Assembly (NCBI GenBank): GCA_004431415.1
Contig: QPMI01000680.1
Span: forward strand, 1 to 52,020
Length of the DNA: 52,020 nucleotides
DNA from: Cyanophora paradoxa CCMP329
Taxonomy: Eukaryota; Plantae; Glaucophyta
Reading direction: 5' to 3'
Part shown: one piece after another, positions 11,468 through 46,364 of the stretch
Layout of the letters: every line of letters starts with the position of its first letter
Numbering within the stretch: the stretch's first letter is position 1
The notes under the pieces: generated by a model
Told to the model about the DNA's origin: nothing
What the model saw: the letters and a program-made list of their open reading frames with translations, nothing else
Database searches by the model: none
Position numbers and translations under genes: made by a program

Positions 11468-11890
11468 GCGTAGAGTTCTTGAGCGCCTTGCAATTTTGTG
11501 GAGCAAGTCAAATTTCGTCGATGTACCCCAGAGCCTTCGCTTTTAAGCCACCGAGCCCCCAAGTTTAGGGGGAATGAGTCGGGGGGTACCCCGACCTTCG
11601 AAAGTGAGGCGCGCGACGTCGACGCAAAGCTCGCGCAAAGCTCGCGCATAGCGCTTCGCAGCGCGCGCGCCGTGCTCAGCCCCGCGGCGCCACGCCCGCC
11701 CCGCAGGCGACTTCGCCGCGCCCGCGCACGCGAGGAGTACACATCGCTCGCTTCATCGGCTCACCCGCGGCGCCGGCGGCGCGCTAGCTACACGCTTTCG
11801 CTTGTCCGAGGTTCACATCATCGAATTCTGCAGCCGTCGCCCCTTCCTCGGCCGCTGTAAGGCGGCGCGCAGGGATTCGATCTCTCAACC

Positions 11891-12617
11891 ATGGCGTCGC
11901 CCGGCGGGCCCAGCGCAAGCAGCTCTGAGTCAGTAGGTACGTCCCGGAACCGCCCCTCGGACCTGCCTGGGCGCGCTTTCTTCCGATCCTTCTAAAAAGC
12001 GTGTTTTCGGAGCGAAATTTTGGCACTATGTTCACTATGCCCGCCGGCCGTGGGCTCGGATCTGGCCGGGGCCTTTTTCAAGCGATCGCCGGCGCCGCGT
12101 CCGTCGTCCGACGGTTCGCGCTGGCGATCGCCCCGGAGTACTCGGTACCAGGGCCTAGCGATCGCCGGAGCGATGAGAAGGCTCTCTGACCGGCGATCGC
12201 TTGCGCAGGAGCTGCTTCAAGTTCGTCGCACCAGCCAACGCCAACGCCTGCAGTGCGTGCCCGCCTCCCGTAGCGCTGCGAGCTTGCTCGCATAGAGATT
12301 CTCTATTCAATTGGATCGCTAGATCTGCCCCGCGCATAGAGCCTTCTCATTGCTCGGCGATCGCTTTGTGTTCGGCGCCATACCCAGCGAGTCCGACCTC
12401 TAACAAAGAGCTGCTGGGCCGGCGATCGCTTCTGGGTTCTCAGTTCTAACGGTCGCCGCGGGCTTGACGTCCACCGCCTTCTCATTGGCCAAGCGATCGC
12501 TGCTTTTCGGTGTCTTATGCCCGACTGCGCAGCATGTCGACCCCAGGAGCACACTCTTTGGGGAGGAAGAGATGGAGTGGACCTCCAGCTCATCTCCCAA
12601 CCCCCTTCTGGCGGGCC
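11891..12617 (+). pseudogene. 3'-truncated copy of the array gene at the array boundary
   Basis: Near-identical to 6661-7387, then joined to unrelated sequence just before the Pro-rich minisatellite. Confidence 0.75.
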
Positions 12618-16037: not shown

Positions 16038-16509
16038 CGCTGAGATTCGAGTCGAGGAGAAGCTGCAGCTGATCAATATCGATATCGACCAATATGGTCT
16101 CTAATACTCTCTACTATAATTATGGAGAAGTCATTGCTAGTCAAGCTTAAGCCTTTTTCGCTCATGAACGGCGGACTCGCCGAGTCGGGAGGTCGAAGGC
16201 CGCTGCGACCCTGTGCCGCAGTGCGGGCCTGCAGCTGCGGCCGCTGCGGCGAATCATTGAATTGGCCGGGCAACGTTGACGTGCCAACGTTCAACGGTCA
16301 CCGGGTTAACTTGCCGAATTGGCAATTCTTAACACCTCGGAGACTCGAGCTCGGATCCCGGAGTCTAACTTCTCCCGATCGATACTAGTATATCATCCCA
16401 TGATGATCAGCCCAACCCCCTTATGTGCGCGATTCGTGCCTTCTCCCGATCAGCCCTAACTTAGTGAGTCAATGAGTAGGCTAGTAGCCTACCGCCAGTG
16501 GTCCGCCAC

Positions 16510-16901
16510 TAGGGTTGCCGTGTCAATTGACATGTCAGTCTACCCTGTGGACATTGACATCGGACATTTGACATGTCAACCGACATGTCAATTGACATTG
16601 ATTATTATATTATATTATATTATATTATATTCCAAAAGTGAGGCGGCGGGGCAGCTTGGGCGAGGTCCTCAGCGCCTCCCCGCTGCCCTCTGCCTCCTTC
16701 CTAACATCAGAAACGTGCTGCTAACGCTTGCAGAGTGCTGCTTACATGTTTTAATCATGATTTGCATGCGTTTTGGCTTGTTTGGAGGGGTATCCCCCCC
16801 AATGTCAATGGACATGTCAACCCGGACCCGTGGACATTGACATGACATGTCAACTGACATTGACATGTCAATGTCAATTGACATCGGACACGGCAACCCT
16901 A
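16510..16901. mobile_element. hAT-type MITE A (392 bp)
   Basis: 15-bp TIR TAGGGTTGCCGTGTC / GACACGGCAACCCTA. Perfect 8-bp TSD TCCGCCAC (16502-16509, 16902-16909). Dense subterminal TGACAT/ATGTCA repeats. Confidence 0.93.
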
Positions 16902-16949
16902 TCCGCCACTGGTCCGCCAGGCTACCGGTACGGCGGTACTAGTAGTAGG

Positions 16950-17292
16950 TAGAGGTGGGGCTCGAGCGCAAATCGGCGGCTCGAGCCGGGCTCGAGCCGA
17001 CACCCCTCGAGCCGCGGGCCGGCTCGAGCCGGCCCGAGGTCGGGGGTACACAGTCCTCGCCTTATATAATATTCGATATATATAACAAAAACCTATATAC
17101 AATAGCTAGCCGGCTCGCCGGCTCGCCGGCTCGCCCATAACAAAACCCGACCTGGCTCGAGCCAGCCGCGCCATACCCCTCGAGCCGGCTTGCTCGAGCC
17201 GGCCCGCGTGGCCAGAGGTCCGGCTCGAGCCGGCCGGCCCCTCGGCCCGGCCCGGCCCGGCTCGAGCCAGCCCGGCTCGAGCCCCACCTCTA
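16950..17292. mobile_element. hAT-type MITE B (343 bp)
   Basis: TIR TAGAGGTGGGGCTCGAG / CTCGAGCCCCACCTCTA. 8-bp flanks GTAGTAGG / CTAGTAGG (7/8 match). Subterminal GGCTCGAGCC palindromes and an AT-rich core. Confidence 0.88.
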
Positions 17293-17643
17293 CTAGTAGG
17301 AAAGTCTGGACTCCGGCCCTGGAGGCTGGAGGCTGGAGCCCGGTACTGTGCGCCAGTACGTGTGCGGTCACACACCGGGTGTACGCGTGTACGGTACCCA
17401 GTGTACTACCCACATCTCGGGCCACATCCTCGGCCCACATGTCCTACGGTACTGATCATGAGCCATATGCATGTTGTATATATACTATATGTATGACGAT
17501 TTTTAGACTCTGGAATTCGAATCTTTTTTTTAATCATAAATCCGGAACCTTGACTTTTCGAGCTGGATGGAATCGCCGCTGCATGCGCAGCTGGATCCGG
17601 AATTCGAAATTGCCTGGAATTTTGATACTGTACTAGTACTACT

Positions 17644-18292
17644 CAGTGCTGTCATTATAATGTACGTTTATAATTAATGACATTATTTAATGCCCATGAA
17701 GTACATTAATTATAAACCGGCGTAAATAATGGACATTATTTAATGTGGGGGGGTATTTTTGGCGCGAAGTTGATCTCTGACCTTCTAACAGCTTAACAGA
17801 GCCGCCGGAACGCTTTAAATCACTGTCGGAGTGGTTCTCGCTGCCTTGGAGAGGTCGACGTGTTGGAGGGGGGGTATACGTACATCGACCCCATCCCTTG
17901 GGCGTGGCGGAGCTGAAGGGGGGCGCACGATCAACGCTCAAACGTTCTATATAAGCGATAAACACTTCCTTGAAACTTAGGAAGGCTTTACAAGCTTACA
18001 AGCAACTTAGGAAGGCTTAGTTGAGGTGCTAGCTGGATGAGTCTCAGTGAGGCCTTCCTGCAGCTGGGGCCCGGGGCTCCAGGCCTAGGCCATCTCCAGC
18101 CTGCCAGGAGGGTCATAAACGACTAGGGACATGCTCTTGCGCCGTTTAGATAGTGTTCGCAGCGCCAAAGACGAGCGGAAAGTGCGTTTAAACGTAATTA
18201 ATGAGTATTTAATATAATAATACATTATAATACATTATAATGCCTCATTAAATAATGCCCGACCTCCCGTGTCCATTATAATGACAGCACTG
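17644..18292. mobile_element. hAT-type MITE C (649 bp)
   Basis: 19-bp TIR CAGTGCTGTCATTATAATG / CATTATAATGACAGCACTG. The left 8-mer GTACTACT recurs at 18301-18308 after an 8-bp spacer. Subterminal CATTA/TAATG repeats. Confidence 0.85.
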
Positions 18293-19205
18293 GTACAGTG
18301 GTACTACTACTGCTAGTATGATATTACGGCATGATACTGTACTAGTACTACTAGTATGATACGAATCGACTTTTTTTCATGGATTCCACCTTTTAACTTG
18401 CCAAGTTGCCAAAAAACAAAACAGTGAAGAAGCCTTTGAAGTCTTTGCAATTGTTTTTTGAACGATTCGAGCCCGATCGCGACGTCCAACGTCGTCCATG
18501 ATGACGCCGCATGACGGACCATTGACGGTCCATGACGGTCGATGATCGATTGAACTCATTGGAGTTCTGCGCATGCTCGTGAGCAGGGCTGTCAACATTT
18601 TACGCCCCCAAAATGGACCAGAAAATTTTGAGGAATATTCCGGGAACGCTGCGAACGCGTTGCGCATGCGCGCCGTAGACACACGTTCAAAGCTGCGAAG
18701 CACTAAGATAACATCACAATAAGCATTCTGAGAGACGTACGGCATATAGTCTTTTGGAGCTTTGAAACCGAAATGCAAGGCCCTTGGTGGGGTCAGATGG
18801 GGGGGGGGGGGGGGGGCGCAGCCGCGCAGTATACATTCGAATTCCCCCTGCAAATGTTTTTTAAACGGCCGCGGGAGTCGCGGCGGGAGTCGCGGGACCC
18901 GAAAGTTTTCCCAAAATTTTCTAATATTTAATATTCCGGGAACGTTCCAGGCTGATCCCGGAATATTCCGGCTGACAGGCAGTGACAGGATGCACTGACA
19001 GCCCTCGTGACTCAGAGTCGTGAGTCGTGAGTCGTGTGACCGTCGGACGGCTCGTTCTTCATCTTCTAACTTGAACGGATCCGGAGCCAGTTCAGATCAT
19101 GTGCCGTCGACGTCGAGGGTCGAATTCGGAAGCCTCGAAGGCTCGAAGTCGATTTGCGCGCGCCATCGGCGAGTCACGCGCGAGCCTGCAGGCCTGAGGC
19201 TGCGG

Positions 19206-19432
19206 CGAATCGCCGCCGACTCGCCGCCGACTCGCCGCCGAGTCGCCGGCGACCGTCGGACTCGCCGGCGACTCGGCGCCGAGTAGTGCTGGGTTCATCA
19301 GTCAGGGTCCCCCCCTGAGTCGGCGGTACCCCTGACCCAGTCGCTCAGACCCCCAGTCGCTGTGACTGAATCAGTCAACCCGAGGTTCAGCGGCGACTCG
19401 GCGCCGAGTCGGCGGCGAGTCGGCGGCGACTC
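19206..19432. repeat. Fold-back built from 11-bp GACTCGCCGCC units, interrupted by a one-ended MITE D relative
   Basis: The ~42-bp arms 19206-19247 and 19391-19432 are near-perfect reverse complements. Confidence 0.8.
19284..19390 (+). mobile_element. Left-end fragment of a MITE D-related hAT element
   Basis: Begins TAGTGCTG and shares CTGTGACTGAATCAGTCAACCCGAGGTTCAG with 27803-27833. No right TIR. Flanked by the 18-bp direct repeat CGGCGACTCGGCGCCGAG. Confidence 0.8.
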
Positions 19433-20141
19433 GGCGCGCGGCGACTCGCTGCCAGTCGCTGGCGCCGGCGAGCGCCGCGGCGCGCGCCTGCGCCCGCGGC
19501 CGATCGCGATCGGGGCCATCATCAATGACTTCGGAAAATTCATCATGATCATCGAGTCATCAGGCTCGCCGAGTCGGGACTCGGGAACTCGGAAAGCCTC
19601 GGATCATTATGGCATGATCAACGCCGCGGCGGCAGCTCCCAACTTTTAGACTCCCAACTTGACTCAGTGAGTCCCAAGCCTTGAAGTCCCCGGGCCCGAC
19701 TCCGGCGGAGTCCGGCCCCCCCGCGGCCGACTAGCTCCCAGAGACCCGAGTCCCGAGTCCCGAGTCCCGACTCCCGACTCCCGACCACAACTATCCGTAC
19801 CGTATACGTAGTACCGACTCAAGCCCCTTGCGATAAATTGCCGAATCCAGATTCTGCTCTATCATCAGCCTCTATGCATATGGCGAGCCAAGGAAACACT
19901 GACCCCCCAAGCAATTGCCGTGGTGCTAAATTGCCGAATTCGGTCTCTCGGCAATTTACGGTAATTTAAAACTCCGGCTAAAAAAGCCGTCCGATCCTAG
20001 CTGTTCCCTCAGTGACTCCCGTTGTGGCGAATCACCGGTACGGTCAACTGTAAACAGTACTTCCTCGCATTCACCGTACGCGTGATCCCCCCACATCGGG
20101 GCGGCGGGCCGGGGGCGGGGCGCCGGCAAAGGCGGGGGCGT

Positions 20142-23100
20142 CTACGGGCGCTGGAGGTCGTGGAGGAGGTCGAGGAGGGCGGCGGAGGACCACGCCTGCG
20201 TCGGGCACGCCGCCCCGCACTCCGCACCCTCCCCGTTCGTCACCTGCAGCGCCGTCAGCCTTGGGCGCGGGCGGGCGCGGGTGGGGGCGGGGTCGGGCGG
20301 GCGGGCCTCGGGGAGGCCGAAGTAGGGCCCGCGCTCGACGGCGGCGCGGTGCGGCGCGACGGCCGCCAGCGCCTCCTCCCGCCCCACCACCCTGCGAGGG
20401 CCCCGGCGTCAGCGGAGGAAGCGGAGGAAGCGTTGAGGGCGGGGGCGGGGGGCACCCGAAGGCGAGGGCGGCGCGGAGGAAGTAGCCGGAGAGCCAGACC
20501 CACTCGGGCCCCTGGTGGTAGTTGAAGCCCCGCGCCGTCCCGTACTCCGAAGAGTCCGCCTGGGGGCGAGGACGTCAGGAAGAAGCCTAAGGGGCGGAAG
20601 ATTGCGGGCTCGCCTGGGGGTCGTAGTTGGGGCGGTACTGCATGTCGCCGGGGTCGAGGGAGCGCATGCCGAGGGGCCCCAGGAGGTGCTCCCGCATGAG
20701 CGCCAGGCAGCCGGCGGCCCGGCGCCGGTCGAAGAGCTCGGGGGCGACCACCATCGCCACCGCCGCGTTCGGCCGCAGCGCGTAGTCCGGCCACCGCTCG
20801 AACGACCCGAACGTGTCCTGCCGCCCCCGCCCCCGGTCAGGCCTCAGAGGCCCGGGCCCAGAGGCTCAGAGCACGGCAGCACCTTGTAGATGCCGCGGCG
20901 GTTGACGAACTGCTTCTCGAGGAGGTACCCCCCGTCCTCAGCCTCGTTCTGGGGGATGTAGAACGCCTTCTCGAAGCTCGCCTGCGGCCGCGCCGGCGTC
21001 AGGGGAGGGGAGGGGGATCCCGGCGAGGGGGGTACAGGGGCTCGCCTGGAGCCGGTCCTGCCAGTCGGCGTAGGCGAAGAGGCGGCCCTCGCTCTGGAGC
21101 CAGGCGCCGGGGTACGGGAACTTGCCGGCCTTGTGGAGGGCGGTGACCCAGCGGAGGGCCGACTTGACGAGGCCGACGATCTCGACGGCCGCCCCGTCGC
21201 GCGGCGTCGCCGGCTTCCCGTGGTTCCCAGCCTGCGCGCAGGGCTCAGCTCCGGCGAGAGAAAGGGAGGAAGGAGCGAGGGGGGCGACTGCGGGCACCTG
21301 CTGGGACTCGCCGACCTTGTCCATCCAGGTGCCGGCGTTGGCGGTGTTGCCGCCGTACACGATCCCCGTCGCCAGGTCGATCGTCACGTCCACGTTGAAT
21401 GCGTTGTCCTGCAGCTTCGGGTCCACCCGCGGCGCCTCCCACTGCGCGCCCCCGTCAGCAGAAGCGGGAGGAAGCGGGGGGGCGGGCGGGCGGGCGGGCG
21501 CGCCTCGCGGAAGTGGATGCCGTTGGCGTGCGACTCGAGGACCTCCTGCACGAGGCTCGCCACCGTGTGGCTCTTCTCCCCCGGCCGCTGCTGCGCGTCC
21601 GCCGCGCCGAAGGTCTTCCGCCGCTCCGCGAGCGCCGCCGCGTCGCAGTCGAAGAGCCGCTCGACGCGCTCCGCGAGGATCGCCTCGCCGTTGGGCGCCA
21701 TCGCGCAGTACTCCTGCACCGCCTGGAGCCACCACCAGCAGGCGTCGCGCGAGTTGTAGCGCGGCGCCCGCCCCCCGTCGAGGAGGTTCGGGATGAGGCC
21801 GTGGCGCAGGGCGGCGCCGAAGGCGAGGATGAGGTCGCGGGCCTCCCGGAAGCGGCCCGTGACGAGGAGGAGGCCGCGGAGGGCGACGAAGGTGTCCCGG
21901 CCCCACGCGCGGAACGCCCCCGTCGCGAAGTGCGGGAGCCCCGCCGCCAGCGTCGCCGACTTGGGGCGGTCCGGCGACGCCGGGCTGCTCGGCACCACCC
22001 CGTAGAGCTGCGGGGGCCGGGCGGCTCAGCGAGGCGGGGCGGCCGGCTGGGCCGGCTCGGCAGGGCGGGCCTGGACGGAGGTCATGGCGAGGCGCTGGAC
22101 GAGGTCGGACCCGCCGGCGACGAAGGGGCCCATGAGCGCGTGGCAGCGCTCCAGCGCCCGGTAGTAGAAGATCCGCACGACCTGGGGCGGGGCGGAGGCC
22201 CGGGGCCCGTCAGCGAAGCCGAGGGAGGAAGGGGCCGGGCGGAGCAAAGCAAAGCGGACCGTGTCGAAGTAGGGGGCGACGAGGTAGCGGGGGAGGGCCT
22301 TGATGTGCGCCAGCTTCCCCTCGAACCACGCCGCCGTCCCCGCCAGCCCCGTCTGGCGGGAGACGTCAAGGCGGGAGGGGGAGGGAGGGGCGGGAGGGAG
22401 GGGCGGACGGCCTTGAGGCGGCCGGCGAGGTACTCGAGGGCCCAGTCGCCGGCGCGCAGGTGCGCCACCAACGGGTGGTGCCGCGTCTTCCGCTCCGCCT
22501 CCGGCGTCTGCGCCGCGCGTGAGCTGGACGGACGTGGAACGAGGCAGGGGGCGGGGGGGCGGGCCGTCATGGAGGGCGGGGCGACGGCGGCGGAGCGGGC
22601 CTCGGTGCGCCCCAGGCGCGCCTCGTCCAGCATCGCCACGAAGCTCTGCGCCCGAAACGAGGCTTAGAGGGGGCTCCAAGAGGAGAGGAGAGGCCTAGGC
22701 GGGCGGGAGGGAGGGCGGGCCTGGAGGCCGTAGTAGGCGAGCTTGCCGTAGTCCGGCACGTCGTACGCGTCCCACCCGATCGTGTCCTTCTCCTCGGGCG
22801 CCGTCCTGGGGGGGGCCCAGAAGAAGGACGAGCGCTTAGAAAGAGCGAAGCAGACCAGGCGCGAGGGACGGGGGCGGACCGGAAGAGGACGACGTTCATG
22901 TCCTCGAGGGAGAGGGCGTTGAGCGCCGCCGCGAGCTCCGCGTCGTCCAGCGGCGCCAGCGAGCGCACCGCCGCCTGCGCCTCCGCCGGCAGCTTGACCC
23001 GCACGATGAGGAAGGAGCCGGCGGGGAGCTCGCGGATCTCCAGCGACTTGCCGTCCGCGCCGGGGGCGGCGAGCCCGAGGTAGTCGCTCTCCGAGGTCCG

Positions 23101-26100
23101 CAGCGAGCACCGCAGGCCCTTGAGCGTCTTGCCCTCCGCCCCGTCCGCCTCCTCCCCAAGCACCTGCCGCGCCGTGGCGGGTCGGATCGGGCGCGGCTGC
23201 GGCTGCGGGGGCGGGCGGGGCGGACCTCGAGGCGGGCGGCGAGGGCGGGCCCGACGAGGGCGCCCCCGACGGGGATCCGCTGGGGCGGGGCCGGAGCGCC
23301 CTCCATGGGGGCCGGCGCCACGAGGAAGTAGCCCTCGTGCGAGCACGGGTTCCGCCGGAACACCCTGCGGCGAGGCCGGAGGAGACGCTTAGCTCAAGAG
23401 GGCCGAGGCCAGGCCGCGGGAGAGGGCCGGCGGGCGGGCGCACGTGAAGATGCCGCCGTCGAACTTGGCGTCCACCTCGTTGGCGTGCTCGCCGGCCATG
23501 CGCGCCCGCAGCGCGTTGAGGGCGGCGCGGGCCTTGGCGATGCCGGCCTCCGCCCCCGCCGCCGCGTACGCCCGCGTCTCGTACGTCAGGTCGTTCTGCA
23601 GTGCCCGCGGCCTCAGGGGGGCGGGGGCGGGAAGGGAGGGGGCGGGGCGGGCGCGCCATGCCGGGGACGAGCTCGTCGAAGCCGCGGGCGGAGGCGACGG
23701 CGCCGCACGCCATCGCGCAGACCGCCGCCAGCGGCAGCGCGTGCGCCGTCGCGTTGCGCTGCGCTGCGATGAGGCCGGGCGGCGGGGGCGAGGGCGGGGG
23801 CGGGGGCGGGGGAGGCGCCCGCACCGTGCTGCGGGCCTGGAGGGAGGAGTCGCAGCAGACGGCGGCCGGCGGGGTCGGGATGAGGGGCCGGTAGAAGCGG
23901 TCCCGCTGCGGCCGCCGGCCCTCGCACGGGCGCCCGGCGGAGAAGCGGGGGCCGGCGGGCCCGGGGCGCGCGCACCTCTCCCGGGATGAGGAAGCGGGGG
24001 TCGAGGGAGCCGACGGGCTGCCCCCCCGCCGCCCGCACCTGCCAGACAAAGCGTCAGAGCCGCCAAGCGAGCCCGAACGAAGCGAGAAGGCGGGGCGGGC
24101 CTGAGCGGCGAGGGCGGCGAGGTCGGTCACGGCGGGGGCGTCCCCCAGCACCGCCAGCATCCCTGCCCGCAGGCTCAGCGGGTGGGGCGGATGGACGGGG
24201 CGGGGCGGGGCGGGGCGGCGGGGGCACCGATGCGGCCGGAGTAGTGGGTGGCGACCTCCTTGGACTGGAGGGGCATGGAGGCGAGGACGACGAGGCCCGG
24301 GCGGGCCTTGCGGGCGACGTCGATCATGTACTCCGACACCTCCAGCGGCGTCCTGCCCACAGCCGTCAGGGGCGGGGAAGCCGCGAGGCAACGGGGCAAG
24401 GAAGCGTTGGGCGCACGTGTGGGCCTCGTGGAGGCAGACGCCGTGGAAGGTCTGAGCCACGCGCCGCGTGTAGTCCGCCATCTGCCCCGCAGGCGTGAGC
24501 CGCGCCGCGCGGCGGTGGGGCGCGGGCTTCCGGGGCCCCGCGCGGACCTGGTCCCAGAGCCACGGGTTGTCCTCCCGCCGCTTCCCGTAGTACAGGCGCA
24601 CCGTCCCCCGCGTCACCGCAACCTGCGGGGCCCGCACCGCTCGGACCCGGCCAGCGGCGGGGACCCGCGGGGCGGCGGCCGGCTCGCCTGGCGGAGGAGG
24701 TAGGGGTTCGAGATGCCGAGCTTGGGGTCGGCGGGGTCGCCGGCCGTCGCCGCCCCGTCGCGCAAGTACCCCGGGTGCGCGAAGTACGCCGTCCGCCCGT
24801 CCCGGAACGAGACCTGCCCTCACGTTCAGGCGAGCCGAAGGGGGAGGAGAAGAGGCTGAGCGGGGGCGGGGCGGGGCGGGGCGGGGCGGGGCGGGCCTTG
24901 GTGAAGTAGGGGTCGAGGAAGGGCCGCTCGGGGGTGACGGCGCCCTTCTTCGGGCCCGCCGGGTCCAGCCGCTCGTAGTGCACCTGCCGCGCGGCGGGGC
25001 GGGGCGGGGCGGAGAGGCTGAGGGGCGGGCAGGAGGGGAGGAAGGGGGGGGGGGCGGGCACGGTGTGCCAGATGTTGTGGAGGATCTTCTCCTCGTCGGC
25101 CCAGAACTGCTGGTAGAGCGGCTGGTTCACCTGCGGCCCCGCCCCCGAGGCGGCTCAGAGAGTGAGCGCGGTTCGAGGGAGGCGGCGGGCGCGCCTCGTC
25201 GACGGCGAGGGTGAGGAGGCGGCAGCGGTGCTCGAGCTCCTTCGTGTCCCCCGCGTTGATCGGCGGCGAGTTGAAGAGCGCCAGCAGCACGCCCGTGTCG
25301 ATCTGCCGGGGGGATTGGCGGGGGTGGATCGGCGGGGTTTACGGGGAGCGGCGCGCACGCCCTTGCCGCCGCGGGAGCCGTCGCTGGCGGTGCTCTCCTT
25401 GAGGATGGGGACCGTGTATGTGTTGATCCAGAACGTCGGGTTGCTCCCGAACTTCGCCTCGAAGGGCCGCTTGTTGATCACCCCGTCCCGGAAGTCGTGC
25501 AGCACCTAAGAGAGGGGGCACGCTGGGGTCAGCCGGGCAGCTTTCGGGCTAAGTGCAGACGGAAGGGCCGGGCGCGCCTTCTGGACGTTGACGACGTAGA
25601 ACTGCCAGAGCTTGGCGGGGGCGAGGACCTGGGCCCGGAACTGCAGGACGGCCCAGTTGAGCGCCCCGTCGTTGTCCAGGTGCGGCGAGACCTGCCGGGC
25701 GAGGGGGAGGCGTCAGGCGGCGCCGCGCGGGTGGGATGGGCTCGGGCGGGGCGCGCCATGTGCTTCTGGGACTCCATGCCGGCGGAGAACTCGGCGAGGG
25801 CCTCGTCGAGGGCGATTGCGGCGGCGAGGTGCGGGCTGTTGATGGAGCTGTACCCGCACTCGGGGTGCTCCTGCAGCCAGGGCGTGTCCACCGCCGTCTG
25901 CCCGTACACGACGTCGGCGACGGAGAGCACGCCGCACTCCTCCTCGAGCCGCTGCACGGCGCCCTTGAGCGCCTTCTGCTTGTTCGCCTCCGTCACCGCC
26001 CCGAAGATCGCGCGCGAGAGCACGGTCCGGTCCGAGATCGAGTAGGGCGAGCCGCCCGACGAGAGCGTCTCCATCGGCGAGAAGTGCACGATGCTGTACC

Positions 26101-26910
26101 CGGCCGCCGCCGCCGGCTTCCCCACCGTCTCCGTCCAGTCCGACACGGGGCCCAGCAGCTGCCGGCGCCGCCCTCAGCGAGCGCCGCCGCCGGCTCGCGC
26201 GGGGGGGCCTGACCTTGGAGCAGACGCTCTGGATGGCGAGGGCCTCGAGCGGGACGGCCTTGCCGTTGACGACGACGTCGGAGACGACGGTCACGCGCGT
26301 GCCGACCTCGCGCGCCTTCTCGCGGAACGCGGCGCCGTCGCCCACGGCGCCGGCCTCGCCGTAGAGCGCCACGTCGAAGGTGCCGGCGACGTGCGCCCGC
26401 AGCTCGAAAACCGCGTCCCCCAGCGCGTTCGTCGACCTGCGCGCGCCGTCCGGTCGCACTGCGCCCCGGACCCCTCCCGCGGGCGCCGCACCCCGAGACG
26501 ACGCGCGCGGTGTTCCGGTCAAAGCCGTCCCCCTCGGCGGGGAGGTTCGTCGCGAGCACGGGCTTCCCCGACTTGCACGCGCCGATCGCACCGCGCCAAA
26601 TGACTCGAATGACTGACCCCTGAACGACCTGCGTCGGCGCGCGGCCCTCGCGGGGTCAGCCACGTCGCGTGCGCGCGTCTCGGCAGGAGACGGCGGGGCG
26701 CGCTTCGAGCTCCGCGGGAGCTTTCCTATAGCATGCAGGGGCTCTAGGGGCGTCCGAAGAGCCCGCGGGCAACTCGGGCTCTCGTGGCGCGCGCACCTGG
26801 AGCAGGCCCTTCGGGAGGGAACCCGTGGCATCGGGGGCCTCAAGCACGAAGAGCGAGCCGCTGGAATCGGGTTGGGGGGCCGACGAGGCCGCTCCCTTCT
26901 TCGGCGCCAT
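20142..26910 (-). CDS. AGL: Glycogen debranching enzyme homologue (AGL/GDB1 type), with a degenerate 4-alpha-glucanotransferase domain and an intact amylo-1,6-glucosidase domain; >30 introns
   Basis: Motifs [107 protein letters not shown] and GLPEVTN...QAWS. Confidence 0.95.
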
Positions 26911-27749
26911 ACTCGTGTGGGTACGAGGCTGAAGCTGCTGGCTGGGTACGATTTTGAAGGACCGACCCCACGATATCGATATCGATAATCGATGAACGTG
27001 AGTCACCGCCGACGAACCGCCGTCGACGTCACCGGTCGGCGGTCGATCGACAAGCAGGCTTGAAGCAGCAGATATTAAATTGATCCTCATCGATCATGAT
27101 CGATATATGTACGTATACGTAATACGTATACGTATACGTTTACATACGTCAAGTAAATCACACATACATGCATATTAATGTTAATCACACATGATAATTA
27201 TAAATGTTAATTCGCCTCGACATTAATTGCATGACGATATATGTATGTGTTCGACATATTAACAATTATCGACTCCTATAATGAGTCCTATTGCTCATGA
27301 GCACAGGATCAAGTTTGCAACTCAAATTAGGACCGTGTACATGTCGACGTCAGTGATGTCACTGCATGATCGAGTCACGCCGGCGCGCGCGTTGACTATA
27401 TAAATTAAATATCGTCAAAGTGTATATATATATGTACAAGCTTTAATAAAGATCGACAGCTTAAGATCGAAAATATATGTACAAGCTGTATATAGTTTAT
27501 AATTACGTCACATAAAATGCAATTAGCTTATTAATTACACCCATATGCGCGCAGTCGGAACTTTTAATTAGCTAGACTCGGAAGTGAGATTTTTTGTTCT
27601 TTTTCGTACGTCTTTTTTGCTTTTTTTGAGAGTACCGGACGAATAGTAGTTCGTCGTCGAATACCCGTAGGCTGCACGCCGTGCACGGTGCACGGTGGGG
27701 CCGTGCACATGTACAGTGCCACTGCACACTGCACCGTGGCACTCCGGAT

Positions 27750-28218
27750 TAGTGCTGTCGTCAGTCAGTCCCCCGGCTGACCCAGTCCGTCAGCCCCCCT
27801 GACTGTGACTGAATCAGTCAACCCGAGGTTCAGTCAGGCTACCGTGCAAAAACCGTGAAAAATGACCCGGAAATGACCCAAGCGCGATCTATCTACTTCA
27901 TTCAAGTTGCCAAGCATCAGGCACGGGCGGTAAGGGGTGGATATGCGAGCAGAGAGGACGAGAAAAGGAGATTCGGCCCCCGCCAGGTGTCAGACACCGT
28001 TAGCCTCGCTAGCGTGGACCGTTTCTTGAAGATTTCGACGACAGAAGATCATTTTTTTGGTCGACCCACGTCAGCTTTAGATGAAAAAAGCCCACAGGGG
28101 GGCACGCTCCCAGCAGGGTGTTGTATGGGACTGAGAAAACGTCAGTCAGCCAAAAGCTGACCCAGGCAGGTCAGTCAGACCCTCTGACTGTGACTGTCAG
28201 TGACTGACGACAGCCCTA
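27750..28218. mobile_element. hAT-type MITE D (469 bp)
   Basis: TIR TAGTGCTGTCGTCAGTCA / TGACTGACGACAGCCCTA (1 mismatch). Perfect 8-bp TSD CTCCGGAT (27742-27749, 28219-28226). Subterminal CTGAC/GTCAG repeats. Confidence 0.93.
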
Positions 28219-28535
28219 CTCCGGATCCGTGTGCACGTGCACGGCGTGGGCGTGCGGCGTGCCACGCCGTGACGGTGCGCGGGCCAGCGCGCGCGGGCCA
28301 GCGCGGGCCCGGGCTGCCGGCGCCGCAGACTAACTTTTTAGTAAGGCCCGCAGTGCGCGGCGCACTGCAGCTGCGCCCGGCCAGCCTGAGCGCCGTGCAG
28401 ATCTAGAGCGCGCCGCGCGAGCGCTACTCCGGAGTCCGGAGCAGCAGCCGCACTGCGGCAGCTGCAGCAGGAGCAGCCGCTGAGCAGCAGCAGCAGCAGC
28501 GCGCCGCGCGCGCTATTGCTTGCCGGAATAGATCG

Positions 28536-29766
28536 ATGGCGTCGCGCTTGATGCGCCTGCTGCGCGGCCCGTCTCCGATCGTTGTGCCAGAAGACGAGGA
28601 TGCCTCGCACCCTCCGCCCCTCGTCTCTCCGCCGACTTCTCCGCCACTCGCCAGCGTGAAGACCTTCTTCTCTGAAGCGCCCATCAAGCCAAAGCGCAGC
28701 CCGCCGCTTCCCTCGCAGGCCCCGCCGCACCACTTGCCGCCCCTCCCTGCCCCGGCCGAGAAGGCGGCGGCGCCAGCGGAAACACCAGCATGGAGAAAGC
28801 ACAGCAGACTGGCGATAGTCCTGCAGAAGGTTGGCTGCAGACCCCGACCCCAGTCAAGATCTGATGTTGACCCTTTCGCAGCTGTGGTCTGCGATATGCT
28901 GGGAGATGCCGGACGATGCCGTTCCGGATCGGTTATCCTTCGAAGCGTACTGCTCCACGCACGCCGCGCTGTTTAAGGCGGTGCGCCGAGTGGCCTTGCA
29001 ATGTGGTTCTTCACCGCACCTCGCGCGCTGATTTGCGAGGACCAGCTGCGAGTGGTGTGGGATCCGCAGCAGGCCCGGAAACTGGCCGAGGTAGTCTCGA
29101 CTGCTGTCTCTCCAAACACGTCGAGGCCCCTTCTTTGACGCGCTTTCCACTTGCCCACAGGCAGACTTCCGGACCGACTCTAAGGGCAAAGGATCGGTGG
29201 CGAGGGACTCATGTGCTTATTATTCCCTTTCTTTTCAGTTCTTATTCTGAACTGATCCTCCTTTCTCAGTTCTCTCCCTGATGTACACCTTGTCGGCGCG
29301 CTGGACGGTCGCGGCGTCGAACGCGGCCGGGGGCCACCAAGCCGAGGCGGAGCCGGACGCTTGCTCCTTCTTTCTTGAGACTCTGCTGCGCGCCGTCTCT
29401 ACATACGACCGGCAGCGCGGTGTTTTACGGCTGAAGCCGCTGGACGAGATCGACGTCGGCGCGGGCAACCCGTACGTGGCGCAGCAGCCGCAGCCGCACA
29501 CGCAGCCGCAGCCGCAATCGCAGTCGCCCCAGCGGCGGTACTCGCACCCTGCGTCCTCGGCGGAGGTGGGCGGGGAGCGCTCGGCGAGCGAGGTCCGCTC
29601 TCGGCGCGGCTCGGTCGGGAGCTCGGAGCTGCAGGACGAGGCGGAGCGCGGGGACTACGCGCGGCGGCTCCGGCAGTCGATGCGCTCGCGCTCCGTGGAC
29701 ATGGGCGACGAGCTCCGCCGCCTCGCCATCTTCAACGCCCTCCGCAAGCGCGCCCCGGGCGCGTAG
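28536..29766 (+). CDS. Hypothetical protein, about 5 exons; Pro-rich N-terminus and helical, possibly degenerate EF-hand-like core
   Basis: Short introns join ...IVLQK|LWSAICWEMP...LFKA|DQLRVVWDPQQARKLAE|ADFRTDSKGKG...|...LMYTLSARWT...RKRAPGA*. Confidence 0.6.
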
Positions 29767-30919
29767 CCCCCGCGGCGCCCCCCGGGCAGGGCAGGGCGGG
29801 GCGGGGCCCCCGCCAGCTTGCTTGCCCCCCCGGGGCCCGAGTGGCAGTACCTCATTTCCCTTTCTTTCTCTTTCCCCTTTCCCTATGAGACGTCGCTATT
29901 GGTGTATAGGTCACGGTTGCATATATTTTGCAGGCGATATTTTTTTGGATGAAAAGGAGGAGTGTAGTGTAGTGGAGGAGTAGAGAAGTGTGCTAGTCAG
30001 ATAGTCTTACAGCCACAGCGTTAGCTAGCCTCGAGGCGGTTAGGGCGTTGGAGTGTGTTTTGACGTGAGATGGGTGATTCGTTGTGGTTTTTTTTTTGTA
30101 CTTAGGGTCCGTTCTTACCCCTGCGATCCGCACTCTATTGCGCGCACTGTAATTATTATTGGACAGGGCGAGTTGCTCGATCGGGACGGAGCTCCACTAT
30201 CGCTATCGATTTTGTTCGGATATTCCCACAGACAAAGTCCTGTTAATACAGGCTTCTCGTCCATATAACTAGTGATACACAGCGCCTTCAGTTTCGTATG
30301 GGATTTAAATTTCCATCGAGGTGCAAATGTACCGCAGTTCTACGACAGTCCTAGTGCAGCACCCGCTGCAGTCGTGTCACTTCGATCACTTGCATAATGT
30401 CTATGTTTGCCGTTCTGTCGTCGACGTCGCGCTGCGCTTCTGCATGCGCGTCACGCACTAGTACTGCGGCACTCCGAGGCTCCTTCCGAAGTTCCTCGAA
30501 GCAGTTTAATTTGCATGACGTTAACGGTCATGATCACTGACCCGAGCCTCGCCGCAGGCTCGTATCCCGGAGCCGCCGACGTCGACACACGTGCATGTCC
30601 CTAATTGTAATGATTACGATCGATGACATCGAGCCACTGGCCGGGCCCGCGCGCATGGCTAGCGCCCAGCCTGAGAGCAGACGTACTCTGATCTCGGATT
30701 GCCATGTTGAGAACTTCGGAATGCACAGCGGAGAGCGGCGGCACATAAATAAGCCACCGCGGCAGAGATCTAGAGCCCCCGAAGCCTGAATTTCAACGGG
30801 TACGAGTACCGAACACAGAACACAGATGCTATGCTGCTCGGGTAGGGCAGCACACGCACAAGTGCGCACGGTGCTGATCACGAGTGCACAGCTCAGCGGC
30901 CAGGCGGGGGCGGCGCCCC

Positions 30920-32243
30920 TCACAGGACCTCGAAGCTGTCGGCGATGGTGCGCAGGAGCTCGGTGTCCGTCGAGCTGCCCTCCTCCGGGCACTGCACGTT
31001 CAGCTGCGGCGGCGGCGGCGGCAGCTCCCGCTCAACCGCAGGGAAGGGGCGGAGGCCGGAGCGGGGCGGGGCGGGGCGGGGCGGGGCGGGGGTACGCCTC
31101 GCACCGTGTAGAGGTTGGAGTCCTTGAGGGCCATCACTGCGAGGAAGCGCTGCTTGATCTGAGGGGGGGCGAGCCGCGCCCGGGGCCCCGCCCTCGCGTC
31201 AGACAGACCCTCGGGTGCACGTGCGCCTATCCGCTGGGACGCGGCGGTTGGCGCACCGGGTCGTTGTCGACGGTGTACTCGATCACGTACGCGCCGTCCT
31301 GGCGGGGGGGGGGGGACATAGCGTTAGGGATGGAGGGAAGGAGGAGGGCGGAGGGGGCGCGCCTTGCTCCGGGCGTCGGTCTTGAGCATGCGGGCGCCCT
31401 TCTGCTGCGCGGTGAGGCCCATGCCCACGCCGTCGGGGTTGCCGAAGGAGCCCATCTTGGCTGCGGGCCCGCCGTCACTCCCACGCGGCAGCGCGCGCGC
31501 AAGGCAAGGCGGGCCGCTGGCGGAATGGGGCCAGACTCACTGAAATCCGGCTGGACGCGGTACCTGGGCGGATCGCGCGGTCAGTTCTACCGGGAGAAGA
31601 GCCGACTCCGAACGCGGCCGCACTTGACGAGCGCGGCGCTCCGGTTGGCGTTGGAGGGGTCAGCGAAGAAGAGGACCTGCGCCCGCCGTTCGCGGGGCAC
31701 GCGCACACGCGCGCGCGCATTATTGCATACGCGCCTGGTTGTTCGGCAGGCTGCCCTCGGCGCTCTGCGCGGCGAGAGCTCGTTGAGCAAGGCGGCGTAG
31801 CTAGAGGAAGGGACGTGAGCTGCCGCGCAGCGCCGCGGGCGGGCTGACCGTCCACGACTTGGGGACCTGCGGGCACGCGGTCAGCACGCCTGCGGCCGGC
31901 GGGCGCGGGCGCAGTGCGGATGCACCTTGATGCGGACACCGTCCTGCTCGAAAAGCGTGAAATCCGTCGTGGCGGCCTGCGCGGCCTGCTGCGCCAGCAG
32001 GACGGCGAAAGCTGCGGCTGCCCCCAGCGTCTCGCGGCGGCCGACGGCCTTGACAGTCGACGTCGACGTCGAAGCGACCGCGAAAGTGACTGCCGGAGCC
32101 GAAGCCGCACTCGACGGGCGTGCCGCAGCCGAGCTGGCTAGCCGGCGGGCGTGGGCACCGGAGAGCGCCGCGCTGCTGCTAAAGCTAACAGCCGCATTGC
32201 TGCCAGCGGCCGGGCGGTTCGGAAGCACTGCGAGGCTGAACAT
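30920..32243 (-). CDS. PsbP-domain thylakoid lumen protein (PPD3-like) with bipartite targeting peptide
   Basis: MFSLAV... Ala/Ser-rich transit peptide, then a twin-Arg signal GRRETLGAAAAFAVLLAQQAAQA. Mature exons IKVPKSWT, QPDFTKMGSFGNP, YVIEYTV and NLYTLNVQCPEE...IADSFEVL*. Confidence 0.85.
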
Positions 32244-32574
32244 CTGTGCTACGACGTATGATTCGGCCCTACCCCCCCCCCCCCTCCCCCCCCGCCCGCC
32301 CTGGCCCAGTGGACTTCGCCAATGTCGAAGTCGAAGCCGGCGCGTCGACGTCGATCCCCGGCCGCCGGGCCGGGCCCTTCATGACCTGCTGGGGGGGCGC
32401 CGAGCTCGAGGCCCGCCCGGCGCGGCGCTCTGCTCGTTCCGCTAGCGCTGGGCCACGGCATGCGCCGCGCCGCGCTTAGCTGCAGCGCAGTCGGTCGCGA
32501 TCGGGCAACACGAGCTCAATTTAATACACAGCTGTACTAGCACTACGGCATCTTCGAGTCGTCGCGCACGGATC

Positions 32575-34015
32575 CTAGCGGGAGACGACGTACTCGACGC
32601 GGCGCGGGGCGCCGAGGCAGCAGCCGCACTGGAGGGGCGCCCAGTCGGCGCGCGTCCCCGCCCGCAGCGGCGCCCAGCGCTTCGAGCAGGCGTGCGCCGG
32701 CACCACCTGCGCATGCCGCCCGTCAGAACCCGCGGGGCCGGCGGGGCGGGGCGGGGCGGGGCGGGGCGGGCGGACGATGCGGGAGGCGGCGCGGGCGCAG
32801 GCGGCGGCGTCGAGGTCCGCCTGGAGCGAGCGGGCGGTCACGGCCGCCGGGTGCGCCCCGTAGCGCCCCTCGTGCAGCCGGTACGCCCCGCCCGCTGCTG
32901 CGCCTCCTCCTCGTACCCCCCGCCGCAGCGGCACGCCGCGGGGGCGGGCGCCGCGGAAGCGCAGCGGCAGCGGCAGCCGCATCCGCACCCGCCCGACGGC
33001 CGCGCGGCGCTGCAGTGGTGCGCTGCGGGGCGCGTCGGGCGGCTGGAGAGGGGGCGGGGCGGGCGGGGTTACCGGGGGCCAGGGGGACGCCCCGAAGACG
33101 GCGTCGGCGTTGGCGCGGGCGAAAGAGTCGCCGCCCCGGGGCGCCCGACTCGGGCGGGGCCGGGGCGGCCTGCGCCCAGCCCGGGGCGACGGGGGCGACC
33201 GGGCGGGCGCCGGCCAGCTCCCACCCGCCGTCCGGCAGGGGGCGGAAGGCCGGAGCCGGCTGCTGCTCCGGCTGCGTCGGAGCCGGCTGCTCCGCGAGGG
33301 GCCCCGCCGTCCCCGGCCCGTAGTACGTGTGGTCCTCCGCCTGGCCCGGGGCCGGGTAGTACTGCGGGGCCGGGGGGTACGCCTGGGCGCCCGAGGCCGG
33401 GGGCGCCATGGGGTCGTCGGACGAGCCGGCGGCGGTGGTCTGGGCGGGGTACGAGGAGCCGGCGGAGCGGCGGGCGGGCGCGGCGGGGCGGGCGCCGGAG
33501 GCGGCGGCGTGGGGGTTGGCGCGCTGCGGGGGTAGGGGCAGCTCGCGGTCCTCCTCCTCGCGGGAGGCGAGGACCTCGGCGAGGGGCGCGGCGCCGGCTG
33601 GGCCGGCGCCCGGCTGGCGGTAGACCTTGTGCCACAGGGAGGCGTCCCCGCCCTCGCCCCGCTCGAAGCGCTCCAGCTCGCTCGCCCGCGCCCGCTCCTC
33701 CGCCTCCCGCTTGATCCGCTCCAGCTCGTACGCCCGCTGCCGGTCCCGGAAGTTCCGCGCCGACCCGTACACCTGCGCCCAAGCCGGGCTCGCGTCAGCG
33801 TCACAGCAGCGGGCGGTGCCAGCACGGCAGCCACGGCTACGGCCGCCTGGACTGGCCGCGATCCGGACCTGGCTGGCTAGGTGGTGGGAGTGCTCCCCGG
33901 CGACCTCCGCGCAGACGAGGCAGCCGCCGTACTGCCAGCAGCCCTCCGTGCGCCCATGGTACTCGCGGAATCGCGTCGTGCTTCCGTGCGTACACCAGGG
34001 CTCTGACTGGTCCAT
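32575..34015 (-). CDS. Hypothetical protein with Cys/His-rich N- and C-termini and a Pro/Ala/Tyr-rich middle
   Basis: MDQSEPWCTHG...GCLVCAEVAGEHSHH|VYGSARNFRDRQRAYELERIKREAEE... with a final exon VVPAHACSKRW...LQCGCCLGAPRRVEYVVSR*. Introns match the local consensus. Confidence 0.6.
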
Positions 34016-34264
34016 ACTGCTAGCTGAGAAGCTCCAACGAGCGGGAAATGCCGTCGACGGGCTGAAGGGGCGAAAAGCCGAAGGAAACGGGCGAGAAAGT
34101 CACCAGAACTCCGCGGGCCGGATCCAAGGCACTCAGATTGGAAATAAATACGCTAGTTAGGGTGCAGGCGCAGCTTGCGGAGCTCCGAAGCCTTCGTGGC
34201 GCAACGGAACAACTTTGCAGGGGTACAGCGTCCGTCGAGCTGGCTTGTGCGTGGGGGCCTTCGG

Positions 34265-46272: not shown

Positions 46273-46364
46273 GCAGAGGAATTTCGGAAGCTGAACGCAA
46301 ATGAGCATGAACGTCGACGAGCAGCGCAGCGCAAGCTGCAACACATCTAGATCTCCTGGGGCGG

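What the first reader, a model, noticed from the sequence alone, without database searches (positions are those of the whole stretch)
23700..25930. Debranching enzyme with a dead transferase domain but a conserved glucosidase domain (half-pseudoenzyme)
Seen after splicing: [13 protein letters not shown] replaces the family motif F.GVRLDNCHSTP (nucleophile Asp to His, 24428-24430). VLASMP replaces VVAELF (acid/base Glu to Ser, 24277-24279). CCDSSLQA replaces MDITHDN, and DVVYGQT replaces DVVYNHT. Surrounding structural motifs are retained, as are the C-terminal WMDK Asp and GLPE Glu. Known: AGL/GDB1 needs the GH13 Asp-Glu-Asp triad for transferase activity. Loss at all four sites by substitution is not explained by indel errors. 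Inference: a glucosidase-only or glucan-binding scaffold isoform that relies on a separate transferase (a paralogue or DPE2), relevant to cytosolic starch metabolism in early-branching Archaeplastida.
Basis: partly seen in the sequence, partly recalled or inferred. Interest (0 to 1): 0.8.

Follow-up and report, generated by a model that had tools for sequence, protein, structure and literature searches.

The report
Debranching enzyme with dead transferase half
The glaucophyte alga Cyanophora paradoxa expresses a full-length animal/fungal-type glycogen debranching enzyme in which every catalytic residue of the sugar-chain transferase half is replaced while the glucosidase half is intact, so this supposed relic of host glycogen metabolism cannot debranch on its own.

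Summary
The gene (minus strand, 26910-20142, 33 exons) is Cyanophora paradoxa tig00021682_g23093, a eukaryote-type indirect debranching enzyme of 1519 aa. RNA contigs from three studies carry the spliced transcript and its junctions fit the model. No alternative exon with canonical motifs exists in the window.

About 246 canonical relatives all carry the GH13 catalytic residues, and those positions are invariant in the 158 full-length ones. C. paradoxa has replaced them all:
- Asp to His552, Glu to Ser581, Asp to Gln662.
- Also Arg to Cys550, Asn to Glu553, His to Leu661, and Asn-His to Gly244-Gln245.
- Several sugar-contact residues as well.

The glucosidase residues (Asp1082, Arg1127, Asp1253, Glu1486) are kept. 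Divergence is domain-specific: 73 of 116 conserved transferase columns are kept, against 113 of 125 glucosidase columns. The transferase fold is still predicted (pLDDT 87.5, TM 0.8 to yeast GDE).

Best reading: a glucosidase-only half-pseudoenzyme whose dead transferase domain serves as a scaffold. Enzyme activity is untested. A canonical paralogue and the state in other glaucophytes could not be checked.

The same pattern occurs independently in database sequences from Trichuris and a cave fish. I found no published description. It is a new variant of a known kind, of moderate to high interest.

The parts
20142..26910 (-). Whole coding region of the Cyanophora paradoxa indirect debranching enzyme gene (tig00021682_g23093). 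It has 33 exons and 32 short introns (54-168 nt). Start ATG is at 26910-26908 and the stop at 20144-20142.
   Evidence: Exact exon mapping of P0001, identity of P0001, spliced RNA contigs of 4646-4671 nt, start and stop.
23443..26435 (-). Exons encoding the GH13-like 4-alpha-glucanotransferase (GT) domain, roughly residues 140-746. The fold is retained and the active site is dead.
   Evidence: Pfam hDGE_amylase on exon pieces. AlphaFold2 model pLDDT 87.5. Foldseek top hits are C. glabrata and human GDE, TMq 0.76-0.84. Only 73 of 116 family-conserved columns are kept.
25895..25915 (-). CSR I: DVVYGQT instead of DxVxNHT. Gly244 and Gln245 replace the invariant Asn-His.
   Evidence: 273 of 277 relatives have NH here.
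24417..24481 (-). Exon carrying CSR II: [11 protein letters not shown]. Cys550 replaces Arg, His552 (24430-24428) replaces the nucleophile Asp, and Glu553 replaces Asn.
   Evidence: RNA joints 24351>24416 and 24481>24548.
24228..24352 (-). Exon carrying CSR III: TPLEV...VVLASMPL. Ser581 (24279-24277) replaces the acid/base Glu, and Pro583 replaces the stacking Phe.
   Evidence: The PDB search aligns this exon to human GDE 531-562 and C. glabrata GDE 540-565..
23825..23905 (-). Exon carrying CSR IV: VCCDSSLQA instead of MDxTHDN. Leu661 replaces His, and Gln662 replaces the transition-state Asp.
   Evidence: RNA joint 23905>23976.
23657..23668 (-). 12 nt (VPGM) that the RNA contigs include but the public model splices out. 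The true donor is GC at 23656-23655. This restores the family motif DELVP.
   Evidence: RNA joint 23595>23657 with GC..AG ends, and contig arithmetic of 1147 nt against 1135 nt in the model.
22071..23363 (-). Exons of the central (M1/M2) region.
   Evidence: Pfam hGDE_central on pieces. 23 of 29 conserved columns are kept.
20145..22007 (-). Exons encoding the GH133 amylo-alpha-1,6-glucosidase (GC) domain, with catalytic and substrate residues kept: Asp1082, Arg1127, Asp1253 (21321-21319) and Glu1486 (20309-20307).
   Evidence: Pfam GDE_C E=1.6e-40, 1.2e-14 and 1.8e-16 on exon pieces. 113 of 125 conserved columns are kept. About 50% identity to fungal GC domains..

Best explanation
The gene encodes an expressed, full-length eukaryote-type indirect debranching enzyme (iDBE/GDE) that has become a half-pseudoenzyme. 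Its GH13 transferase active site has lost the nucleophile, the acid/base, the transition-state Asp, the other invariant GH13 residues and several sugar contacts. It therefore cannot move the maltotriosyl part of a four-glucose branch.

Its GH133 pocket is intact. The protein most likely still hydrolyses single alpha-1,6-linked glucose stubs. The dead GT domain is kept because it is the structural partner of the GC domain and may help hold the protein on the glucan.

Such an enzyme can contribute to debranching only if another activity creates the stubs. That partner has not been found. In C. paradoxa, direct debranching is available from the chlamydia-derived isoamylase, which would explain why the GT step became dispensable.

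What is shown:
- the substitutions;
- transcription and correct splicing;
- an intact ORF across 33 exons;
- domain-specific divergence;
- a retained predicted fold.

What is inferred:
- loss of GT activity, from mutagenesis of the same residues in yeast and human enzymes;
- retained GC activity;
- the scaffold role;
- dependence on another enzyme.
For: Family and architecture:
- Pfam hDGE_amylase, hGDE_central and GDE_C hit the exon pieces.
- P0001 is the C. paradoxa model.

Expression:
- Spliced contigs from three studies carry the transcript, and the DNA run is unspliced.

Catalytic positions:
- R524C, D526H, N527E, E555S, F557P, H626L, D627Q, N219G and H220Q (human numbering). The eight Asp/Glu/Arg/Asn/His positions are 158/158 invariant in canonical sequences; Phe557 is 157/158.
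- The five catalytic positions are canonical in 88 more sequences.
- D535N and E564Q abolish GT activity in C. glabrata and S. cerevisiae GDE (PMC4837477).
- The human triad is D526/E555/D627 (PMC12219210).

GC residues:
- Asp1253 and Glu1486 are kept, as are the GRD Asp and the PRYN Arg.

Domain asymmetry:
- GT keeps 73 of 116 conserved columns (canonical median 114, minimum 79). GC keeps 113 of 125 (median 124).
- The GT/GC identity ratio is 0.63, the lowest of 162 sequences, z = -5.

Fold:
- pLDDT 87.5, TMq 0.81-0.84 to C. glabrata GDE.

Feasibility in trans:
- A mixture of GT-dead and GC-dead C. glabrata GDE is as active as wild type, and inter-domain contacts stabilise the catalytic domains (PMC4837477).

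Background:
- Isoamylase and GH77 transferases exist in the C. paradoxa or archaeplastid cytosolic pathway (PMC6704402; preprint 10.64898/2026.09.25.754361).
Against: - No enzyme assay exists for this protein.
- No known enzyme in this pathway is documented to leave single-glucose stubs, so the GC domain's substrate is unexplained if no canonical iDBE paralogue exists.
- GC conservation, at 113 of 125 columns, is at the low end of normal.
- Only one species could be examined, so long-term purifying selection on the dead domain (dN/dS) is not shown.
- The fold prediction leans on an alignment of canonical relatives.
Confidence: 0.65

Rival explanations
1. The protein is a wholly non-catalytic regulator or scaffold. 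It has lost useful activity in both halves and acts only by binding glucan or partner enzymes, like plant ISA2 with ISA1.
For: Non-catalytic paralogues recur in starch metabolism; ISA2 is the example in PMC4919380. The GC domain has lost 12 of 125 conserved columns. No source of single-glucose stubs is known.
Against: All four tested GC catalytic or substrate residues are retained. The GC domain is about 50% identical to fungal enzymes, like other deep protist GDEs. The contrast with the GT domain argues for selection on the GC chemistry.
Confidence: 0.12
2. The GT domain has been repurposed. It has gained a new binding specificity or a different catalytic chemistry using other residues, for example His552 or Glu553, rather than being merely dead.
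For: The fold is kept and the ORF is intact across 17 GT-encoding exons. The replacements are not random loss only, since a His and a Glu now sit at the former Asp-Asn pair.
Against: The acid/base and the transition-state positions have no acidic neighbour (ASMP, SLQA). Sugar-stacking residues of the cleft are also replaced. No precedent is known in GH13.
Confidence: 0.08
3. The gene is decaying: it is still transcribed but no longer under selection.
For: There is extensive loss of conserved residues in one domain. No orthologue was available to test selection.
Against: A 4.5 kb ORF is intact across 33 exons with all splice sites used. GC conservation is near normal. The transcript is assembled in three independent studies.
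Confidence: 0.05
4. The pattern is an artefact. Either assembly or sequencing errors, or a wrong gene model, hide canonical exons.
For: The public model does contain one wrong donor, at intron 17.
Against: DNA and RNA contigs of four runs show no differing letters. No canonical motif is present in any frame of the window. Nine or more separate substitutions cannot come from indels.
Confidence: 0.02

Closest known systems
Eukaryotic glycogen debranching enzyme (human AGL, yeast Gdb1, Candida glabrata GDE; GH13 transferase + GH133 glucosidase)
   Same: It has the same three-part architecture and length (about 1520 aa) and the same predicted GT-domain fold. It keeps the same GC catalytic Asp and Glu and substrate residues, and it is cytosolic with no obvious targeting peptide.
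   Different: All GH13 catalytic and most -1/+1 subsite residues are replaced. GT-domain identity to canonical enzymes is the lowest of 162 sequences. By the mutagenesis record it should lack the transferase step that defines indirect debranching (PMC4837477, PMC12219210).
Engineered GT-defective C. glabrata GDE mutants (D535N, E564Q)
   Same: Loss of the same two residues. These mutants keep GC activity and restore full debranching when mixed with a GC-defective mutant (PMC4837477). This is the best experimental model of what this natural protein could do.
   Different: They are laboratory point mutants with an otherwise intact cleft. The natural protein has also lost substrate-binding residues and has diverged throughout the domain.
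Plant ISA2, the non-catalytic isoamylase-type debranching enzyme subunit
   Same: It is a debranching-enzyme homologue in starch metabolism with substitutions at catalytic residues, retained for stability or specificity of a complex (PMC4919380).
   Different: ISA2 is a separate single-domain GH13 protein that is wholly inactive and works with ISA1. Here only one of two catalytic domains in one polypeptide is dead, and no partner is known.
Database GDE homologues of Trichuris muris (UniRef A0A5S6QS88) and Lucifuga dentata (LDENG_00098520)
   Same: They show the same asymmetry. GT catalytic residues are replaced (Trichuris: Asp to Val and Glu to Thr; Lucifuga: Asp to Val and Asp to Thr), while GTWMDK and LPE are kept.
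   Different: They come from unrelated lineages with different replacement residues, so these are independent events. They are unpublished and unverified gene models, and the animals probably also have a canonical AGL (not checked).
Bacterial and archaeal GH133 (GDE_C-only) proteins
   Same: They would share the presumed sole activity or domain, an (alpha/alpha)6 amylo-alpha-1,6-glucosidase-type barrel (Pfam PF06202).
   Different: Those proteins lack the GT and central domains altogether. Here the GT domain is retained as a folded, inactive module.

Membership tests
Eukaryotic indirect debranching enzyme (AGL/Gdb1; GH13 + GH133) | Domain architecture: GT (hDGE_amylase), central (hGDE_central) and GC (GDE_C) in one polypeptide of about 1500 aa | tested here: met
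   Pfam on exon pieces. Precomputed PF14701, PF14702 and PF06202 for P0001. The N-terminal PF14699 is not detected, as in some other protist and fungal members.
Eukaryotic indirect debranching enzyme (AGL/Gdb1; GH13 + GH133) | GH13 catalytic triad: nucleophile Asp, acid/base Glu, transition-state Asp (human D526/E555/D627) | tested here: not met
   His552, Ser581 and Gln662. These positions are invariant in 158 canonical sequences and canonical in 88 more.
Eukaryotic indirect debranching enzyme (AGL/Gdb1; GH13 + GH133) | Other invariant GH13 CSR I-IV residues (Asn-His of CSR I; Arg, Asn and His of CSR II; His of CSR IV) | tested here: not met
   Gly244-Gln245, Cys550, Glu553 and Leu661. Only His555 of CSR II and Asp240 of CSR I are kept.
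Eukaryotic indirect debranching enzyme (AGL/Gdb1; GH13 + GH133) | GH133 catalytic residues (human D1261/E1502) and substrate residues (D1102, R1147) | tested here: met
   Asp1253, Glu1486, Asp1082 and Arg1127.
Eukaryotic indirect debranching enzyme (AGL/Gdb1; GH13 + GH133) | GT-domain (beta/alpha)8 fold with subdomain B as in solved GDE structures | tested here: met
   AlphaFold2 model pLDDT 87.5, pTM 0.87. Foldseek TMq 0.81-0.84 to 5d06/7eim/7ekx and 0.76 to 8zeq. The prediction is alignment-driven.
Eukaryotic indirect debranching enzyme (AGL/Gdb1; GH13 + GH133) | [quoted passage not shown] | not testable with these tools
   This needs recombinant protein and assays.
Pseudoenzyme domain (catalytically dead homologue retained under expression) | Catalytic residues are lost while the fold, the reading frame and expression are retained | tested here: met
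   Purifying selection on the dead domain (dN/dS) was not tested, for lack of an orthologue.
Stand-alone GH133 glucosidases (GDE_C-only proteins) | No GT or central domains | tested here: not met
   The GT and central domains are present and folded.

The most novel reading that the evidence does not exclude
The 'relic' iDBE reported in glaucophytes is in fact a naturally glucosidase-only enzyme. It would be a preserved intermediate in the replacement of host indirect debranching by bacterial-type isoamylase during the origin of archaeplastid starch. That implies the GH133 activity, or the dead GT domain as a granule-binding module, has an independent role in cytosolic starch metabolism that does not need the coupled transferase. 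It also implies that an as yet unknown activity makes its substrate.
Probability: 0.3. Interest if true: 0.7.

Novelty: new variant of a known kind. Interest (0 to 1): 0.6.

Why it matters
Models of how starch metabolism arose in the first algae count enzymes by family. A recent survey lists the indirect debranching enzyme as present in all glaucophytes, as a relic of host glycogen metabolism (preprint 10.64898/2026.09.25.754361). If the only C. paradoxa copy cannot do the transferase step, then indirect debranching as a pathway is already gone in this lineage. What survives is a glucosidase with a dead partner domain.

That changes the pathway reconstruction. It gives a natural test of whether the two halves of GDE can be uncoupled in vivo. 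It also raises a concrete biochemical question: who makes single-glucose stubs, or what else does GH133 cleave?

The same one-sided loss appears in a nematode and a fish sequence, always GT dead and GC kept. Among about 250 sequences I saw no clear case of the reverse. This suggests a general asymmetry in which half is dispensable.

Tried and rejected
1. Sequencing or assembly error. Rejected: no differing letters in three RNA-type runs and one DNA run.

2. Wrong splicing hiding canonical motifs. Rejected: RNA joints flank the motif exons, contig-length arithmetic fits the model plus 12 nt, and no canonical motif appears in any frame of the window.

3. Apparent skipping of the 87-nt exon 24983-24897 (joint 24815>25058). 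Rejected as a mapping hole in a masked C-rich repeat. The DNA run also has no depth there. The contig holds 1147 nt between 23161 and 25194, which requires that exon.

4. Search for a C. paradoxa paralogue with an intact triad. None was found among named hits, among the ten closest exon-1 hits or among the ten most GC-rich-composition hits. This is not proof of absence, because the genome itself could not be searched.

5. Search for short glaucophyte fragments of the GT catalytic region. Blank, and it says little.

6. Earlier scan notes on debranching, glycogen or starch elsewhere in this genome. Nothing relevant.

7. The PDB search with the 21-aa CSR II exon alone was blank because the query is too short. 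The motif was placed through the family alignment instead.

8. Pfam on ten long ORFs elsewhere in the window found no families.

9. Mapping C. glabrata residue numbers through P0111 failed because the numbering is offset. Human numbering through P0084 was used instead.

The joined model used throughout is the public protein P0001, by reference. The RNA-corrected 1523-aa version was neither built nor searched.

Full report
**What is there**

The region lies in a very GC-rich block (74-77% GC, against 54-60% in the flanks) on the minus strand. Stop-free pieces of the three minus-strand frames match the three Pfam families that make up the eukaryotic glycogen debranching enzyme:
- hDGE_amylase (E = 1.6e-38 for the first large exon);
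- hGDE_central;
- GDE_C (E = 1.6e-40, 1.2e-14 and 1.8e-16).

An exhaustive HMMER search with the 139-aa exon 26173-25757 returned a 1519-aa protein at 99% identity, P0001. The collection holds it as EukProt EP00741, Cyanophora paradoxa, gene tig00021682_g23093.t1.

P0001 maps exactly onto 33 exons between 26910 (ATG) and 20145, with the stop at 20144-20142. The 32 introns are 54-168 nt long.

**Is the gene model real?**

Public runs of this organism were laid on 20700-26600.
- Three runs from three studies (X1, X5, X8) hold the stretch at about half of its words. This is what a spliced transcript would give.
- Their contigs (4646, 4671 and shorter) skip the predicted introns. Joints include 24351>24416 (inside CSR II), 24481>24548, 24037>24100 and 23905>23976.
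- A larger 2012 run (X12) covers exons and introns without any joint, so it is genomic DNA.
- No run shows a differing letter.
- The kinds of these runs are guesses of the tool ('RNA?'). The intron-less contigs are themselves the evidence for RNA.

One joint (24815>25058) seems to skip the 87-nt exon 24983-24897. That interval has no depth even in the DNA run, and the tool reports masking repeats there. The X1 contig holds 1147 nt between window positions 23161 and 25194. The P0001 model predicts 1135 nt, and the 12-nt difference is explained by the next point. The exon is therefore present.

The RNA joint 23595>23657 uses a GC donor at 23656. The public model uses a GT at 23668. The RNA form adds VPGM (23668-23657) and restores the family motif DELVP. 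The true product is thus most likely 1523 aa.

The contigs end at or within a few nt of the annotated ATG, so the 5' end is not independently confirmed.

The public protein served as the joined reference.

**The observation**

I used two alignments of P0001: one of 44 full-length relatives, and a profile alignment of 277 sequences. P0084 has human AGL numbering, and the residues named in PMC12219210 fit it. Replacements in the transferase site:

| Region | Family motif | C. paradoxa | Replacements |
|---|---|---|---|
| CSR I | DxVxNHT | DVVYGQT | Asn219 to Gly244, His220 to Gln245 |
| CSR II | GxRxDNCHSTP | [11 protein letters not shown] | Arg524 to Cys550, nucleophile Asp526 to His552, Asn527 to Glu553 |
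| CSR III | xAELFT | LASMPL | acid/base Glu555 to Ser581, Phe557 to Pro583 |
| CSR IV | DxTHDN | DSSLQA | His626 to Leu661, Asp627 to Gln662 |

The eight Asp/Glu/Arg/Asn/His positions are invariant in 158 of 158 canonical full-length sequences, and Phe557 in 157 of 158. The five catalytic positions are also canonical in 88 further sequences from the last search.

Sugar-contact residues are also gone: Trp461 to Tyr483, Trp487 to Thr513, Asp489 to Gly515, and Glu579 to Asp605. Their roles come from the yeast and human structures (PMC4837477; PMC12219210).

The exon with CSR III aligns on its own to human GDE 531-562 and C. glabrata GDE 540-565 in the PDB.

In the glucosidase half, the catalytic Asp1253 (GTWMDK) and Glu1486 (GLPE) are kept. 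So are the Asp of GRDTF (Asp1082) and the Arg of PRYN (Arg1127, human R1147).

No other exon with canonical motifs exists in any frame of the 52 kb window.

**Domain asymmetry**

Of the columns that are at least 90% conserved among canonical enzymes:

| Domain | C. paradoxa keeps | Canonical median | Canonical low end |
|---|---|---|---|
| GT | 73 of 116 | 114 | minimum 79 |
| GC | 113 of 125 | 124 | 5th percentile 106 |

- Mean identity to 60 canonical sequences is 0.31 in GT, the lowest of all. In GC it is 0.49, like Tritrichomonas.
- The GT/GC identity ratio of 0.63 is the lowest of 162 sequences (z about -5).
- In the GC-only search the best relatives are about 50% identical. Over the whole length the figure is about 35%.
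- The GT domain is nevertheless predicted to fold. An AlphaFold2 model of residues 140-746 has mean pLDDT 87.5 and pTM 0.87.
- Its best structural matches are C. glabrata GDE (TMq 0.81-0.84) and human GDE (0.76), far above other GH13 enzymes (about 0.4).
- That model leans on an alignment of canonical relatives.

**How it most likely works**

The same residues have been tested by mutagenesis.
- D535N and E564Q abolish transferase activity in C. glabrata and S. cerevisiae GDE. The nucleophile was trapped chemically in the rabbit enzyme (PMC4837477).
- Mutating the human triad D526/E555/D627 does the same (PMC12219210).
- With all three residues and the subsite residues replaced, this protein should have no 4-alpha-glucanotransferase activity (inference, high confidence).
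- The GC residues whose mutation kills glucosidase activity (D1241/E1492 in C. glabrata, D1261/E1502 in human) are intact, so glucosidase activity is probably retained (inference, moderate confidence).

In vitro, a GT-dead and a GC-dead C. glabrata GDE mixed 1:1 debranch as well as the wild type. The transferase product leaves the enzyme before the glucosidase step, and inter-domain contacts stabilise both catalytic domains (PMC4837477). A natural GT-dead enzyme could therefore work if something else produces single-glucose stubs. The dead domain would still be needed as a scaffold.

C. paradoxa has a chlamydia-derived isoamylase-type debranching enzyme (PMC6704402). Archaeplastida use cytosolic GH77 transferases (preprint). 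Direct debranching can thus replace the GT-dependent route. What then feeds the GC site is unknown and is the weak point of this reading.

**Rivals**

- A wholly non-catalytic scaffold, in the manner of plant ISA2 (PMC4919380).
- A repurposed GT domain.
- A decaying gene.
- An artefact.

The last two fit poorly. The ORF is intact over 33 exons, all splice sites are used, expression is seen in three studies, and the data sets are identical.

**Comparison and novelty**

The protein has the architecture and the glucosidase half of the AGL/Gdb1 family, but it fails the family's defining GH13 catalytic features. I therefore file it as a divergent, half-inactive member, not as a functional indirect debranching enzyme.

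Among about 250 full-length relatives examined, only two other lineages show the same pattern:
- Trichuris muris (UniRef A0A5S6QS88 and a longer member of its cluster);
- the cave fish Lucifuga dentata (LDENG_00098520).

Their replacement residues differ, so these are independent events. I saw no clear case of the reverse pattern, GC dead and GT intact. One apparent case, P0047, looks like a faulty C-terminal model.

Full-text searches found no paper describing a transferase-dead GDE. The one recent preprint that mentions the glaucophyte enzyme treats it as an ordinary relic iDBE.

**What remains open**

- Whether C. paradoxa has a second, canonical iDBE. None was found among named hits, but the genome could not be searched.
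- Whether other glaucophytes share the dead motifs. None was identifiable, and one search was blank.
- The enzymology of the protein.

**Verdict**

This is a new variant of a known enzyme, of moderate to high interest to people working on the evolution of starch metabolism and on pseudoenzymes.

Noticed in passing
window 20142-26910 (all 32 introns): GC-AG introns are very common. There are 13 of 32 donors in the public model and 14 of 32 after the RNA correction (44%). The shared donor consensus is G(T/C)(G/C)CGCC, and the introns are mostly 55-80 nt. Several GC donors are directly confirmed by RNA contigs, for example 23656 and 25756. This agrees with the earlier scan note s1-512985.
   Followed up: yes
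window 23657-23668: The public gene model (EukProt P023911) uses a GT donor at 23668. The RNA contigs use the GC donor at 23656. The model therefore lacks four residues (VPGM) that restore the conserved DELVP motif. Gene predictors that disfavour GC donors probably mis-call many exon ends in this genome.
   Followed up: yes
proteins P0079/P0277 (Trichuris muris, UniRef A0A5S6QS88) and P0232 (Lucifuga dentata LDENG_00098520): These are independent GDE homologues with the transferase catalytic residues replaced and the glucosidase motifs kept. Among about 250 sequences I saw no clear case of the reverse. This suggests that the GT half is the dispensable one.
   Followed up: partly
window 24837-25033, 23722-23825, 24187-24227, 21466-21509: C-rich short tandem repeats (CCCCGCCCCG-like) fill many introns. 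The read-laying tool masks them, which gives false holes and one false exon skip (24815>25058).
   Followed up: partly
window 1-20000 and 26000-32000 against 20000-26000, 32000-40000 and 42000-52020: Composition is sharply mosaic. Blocks of 74-82% GC, such as the gene body here, alternate with 54-62% GC blocks. Ten long ORFs in the other GC-rich blocks had no Pfam match. An earlier scan note (s1-512897) reports a tandem array of an orphan gene at 1-12617; I did not examine it.
   Followed up: no
window 26435-26910 (5' exons): The RNA contigs of two runs end at or within a few nucleotides of the annotated start codon, so the 5' UTR and the first two exons are not independently confirmed. Pfam does not detect the N-terminal hGDE_N domain in this protein.
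   Followed up: no
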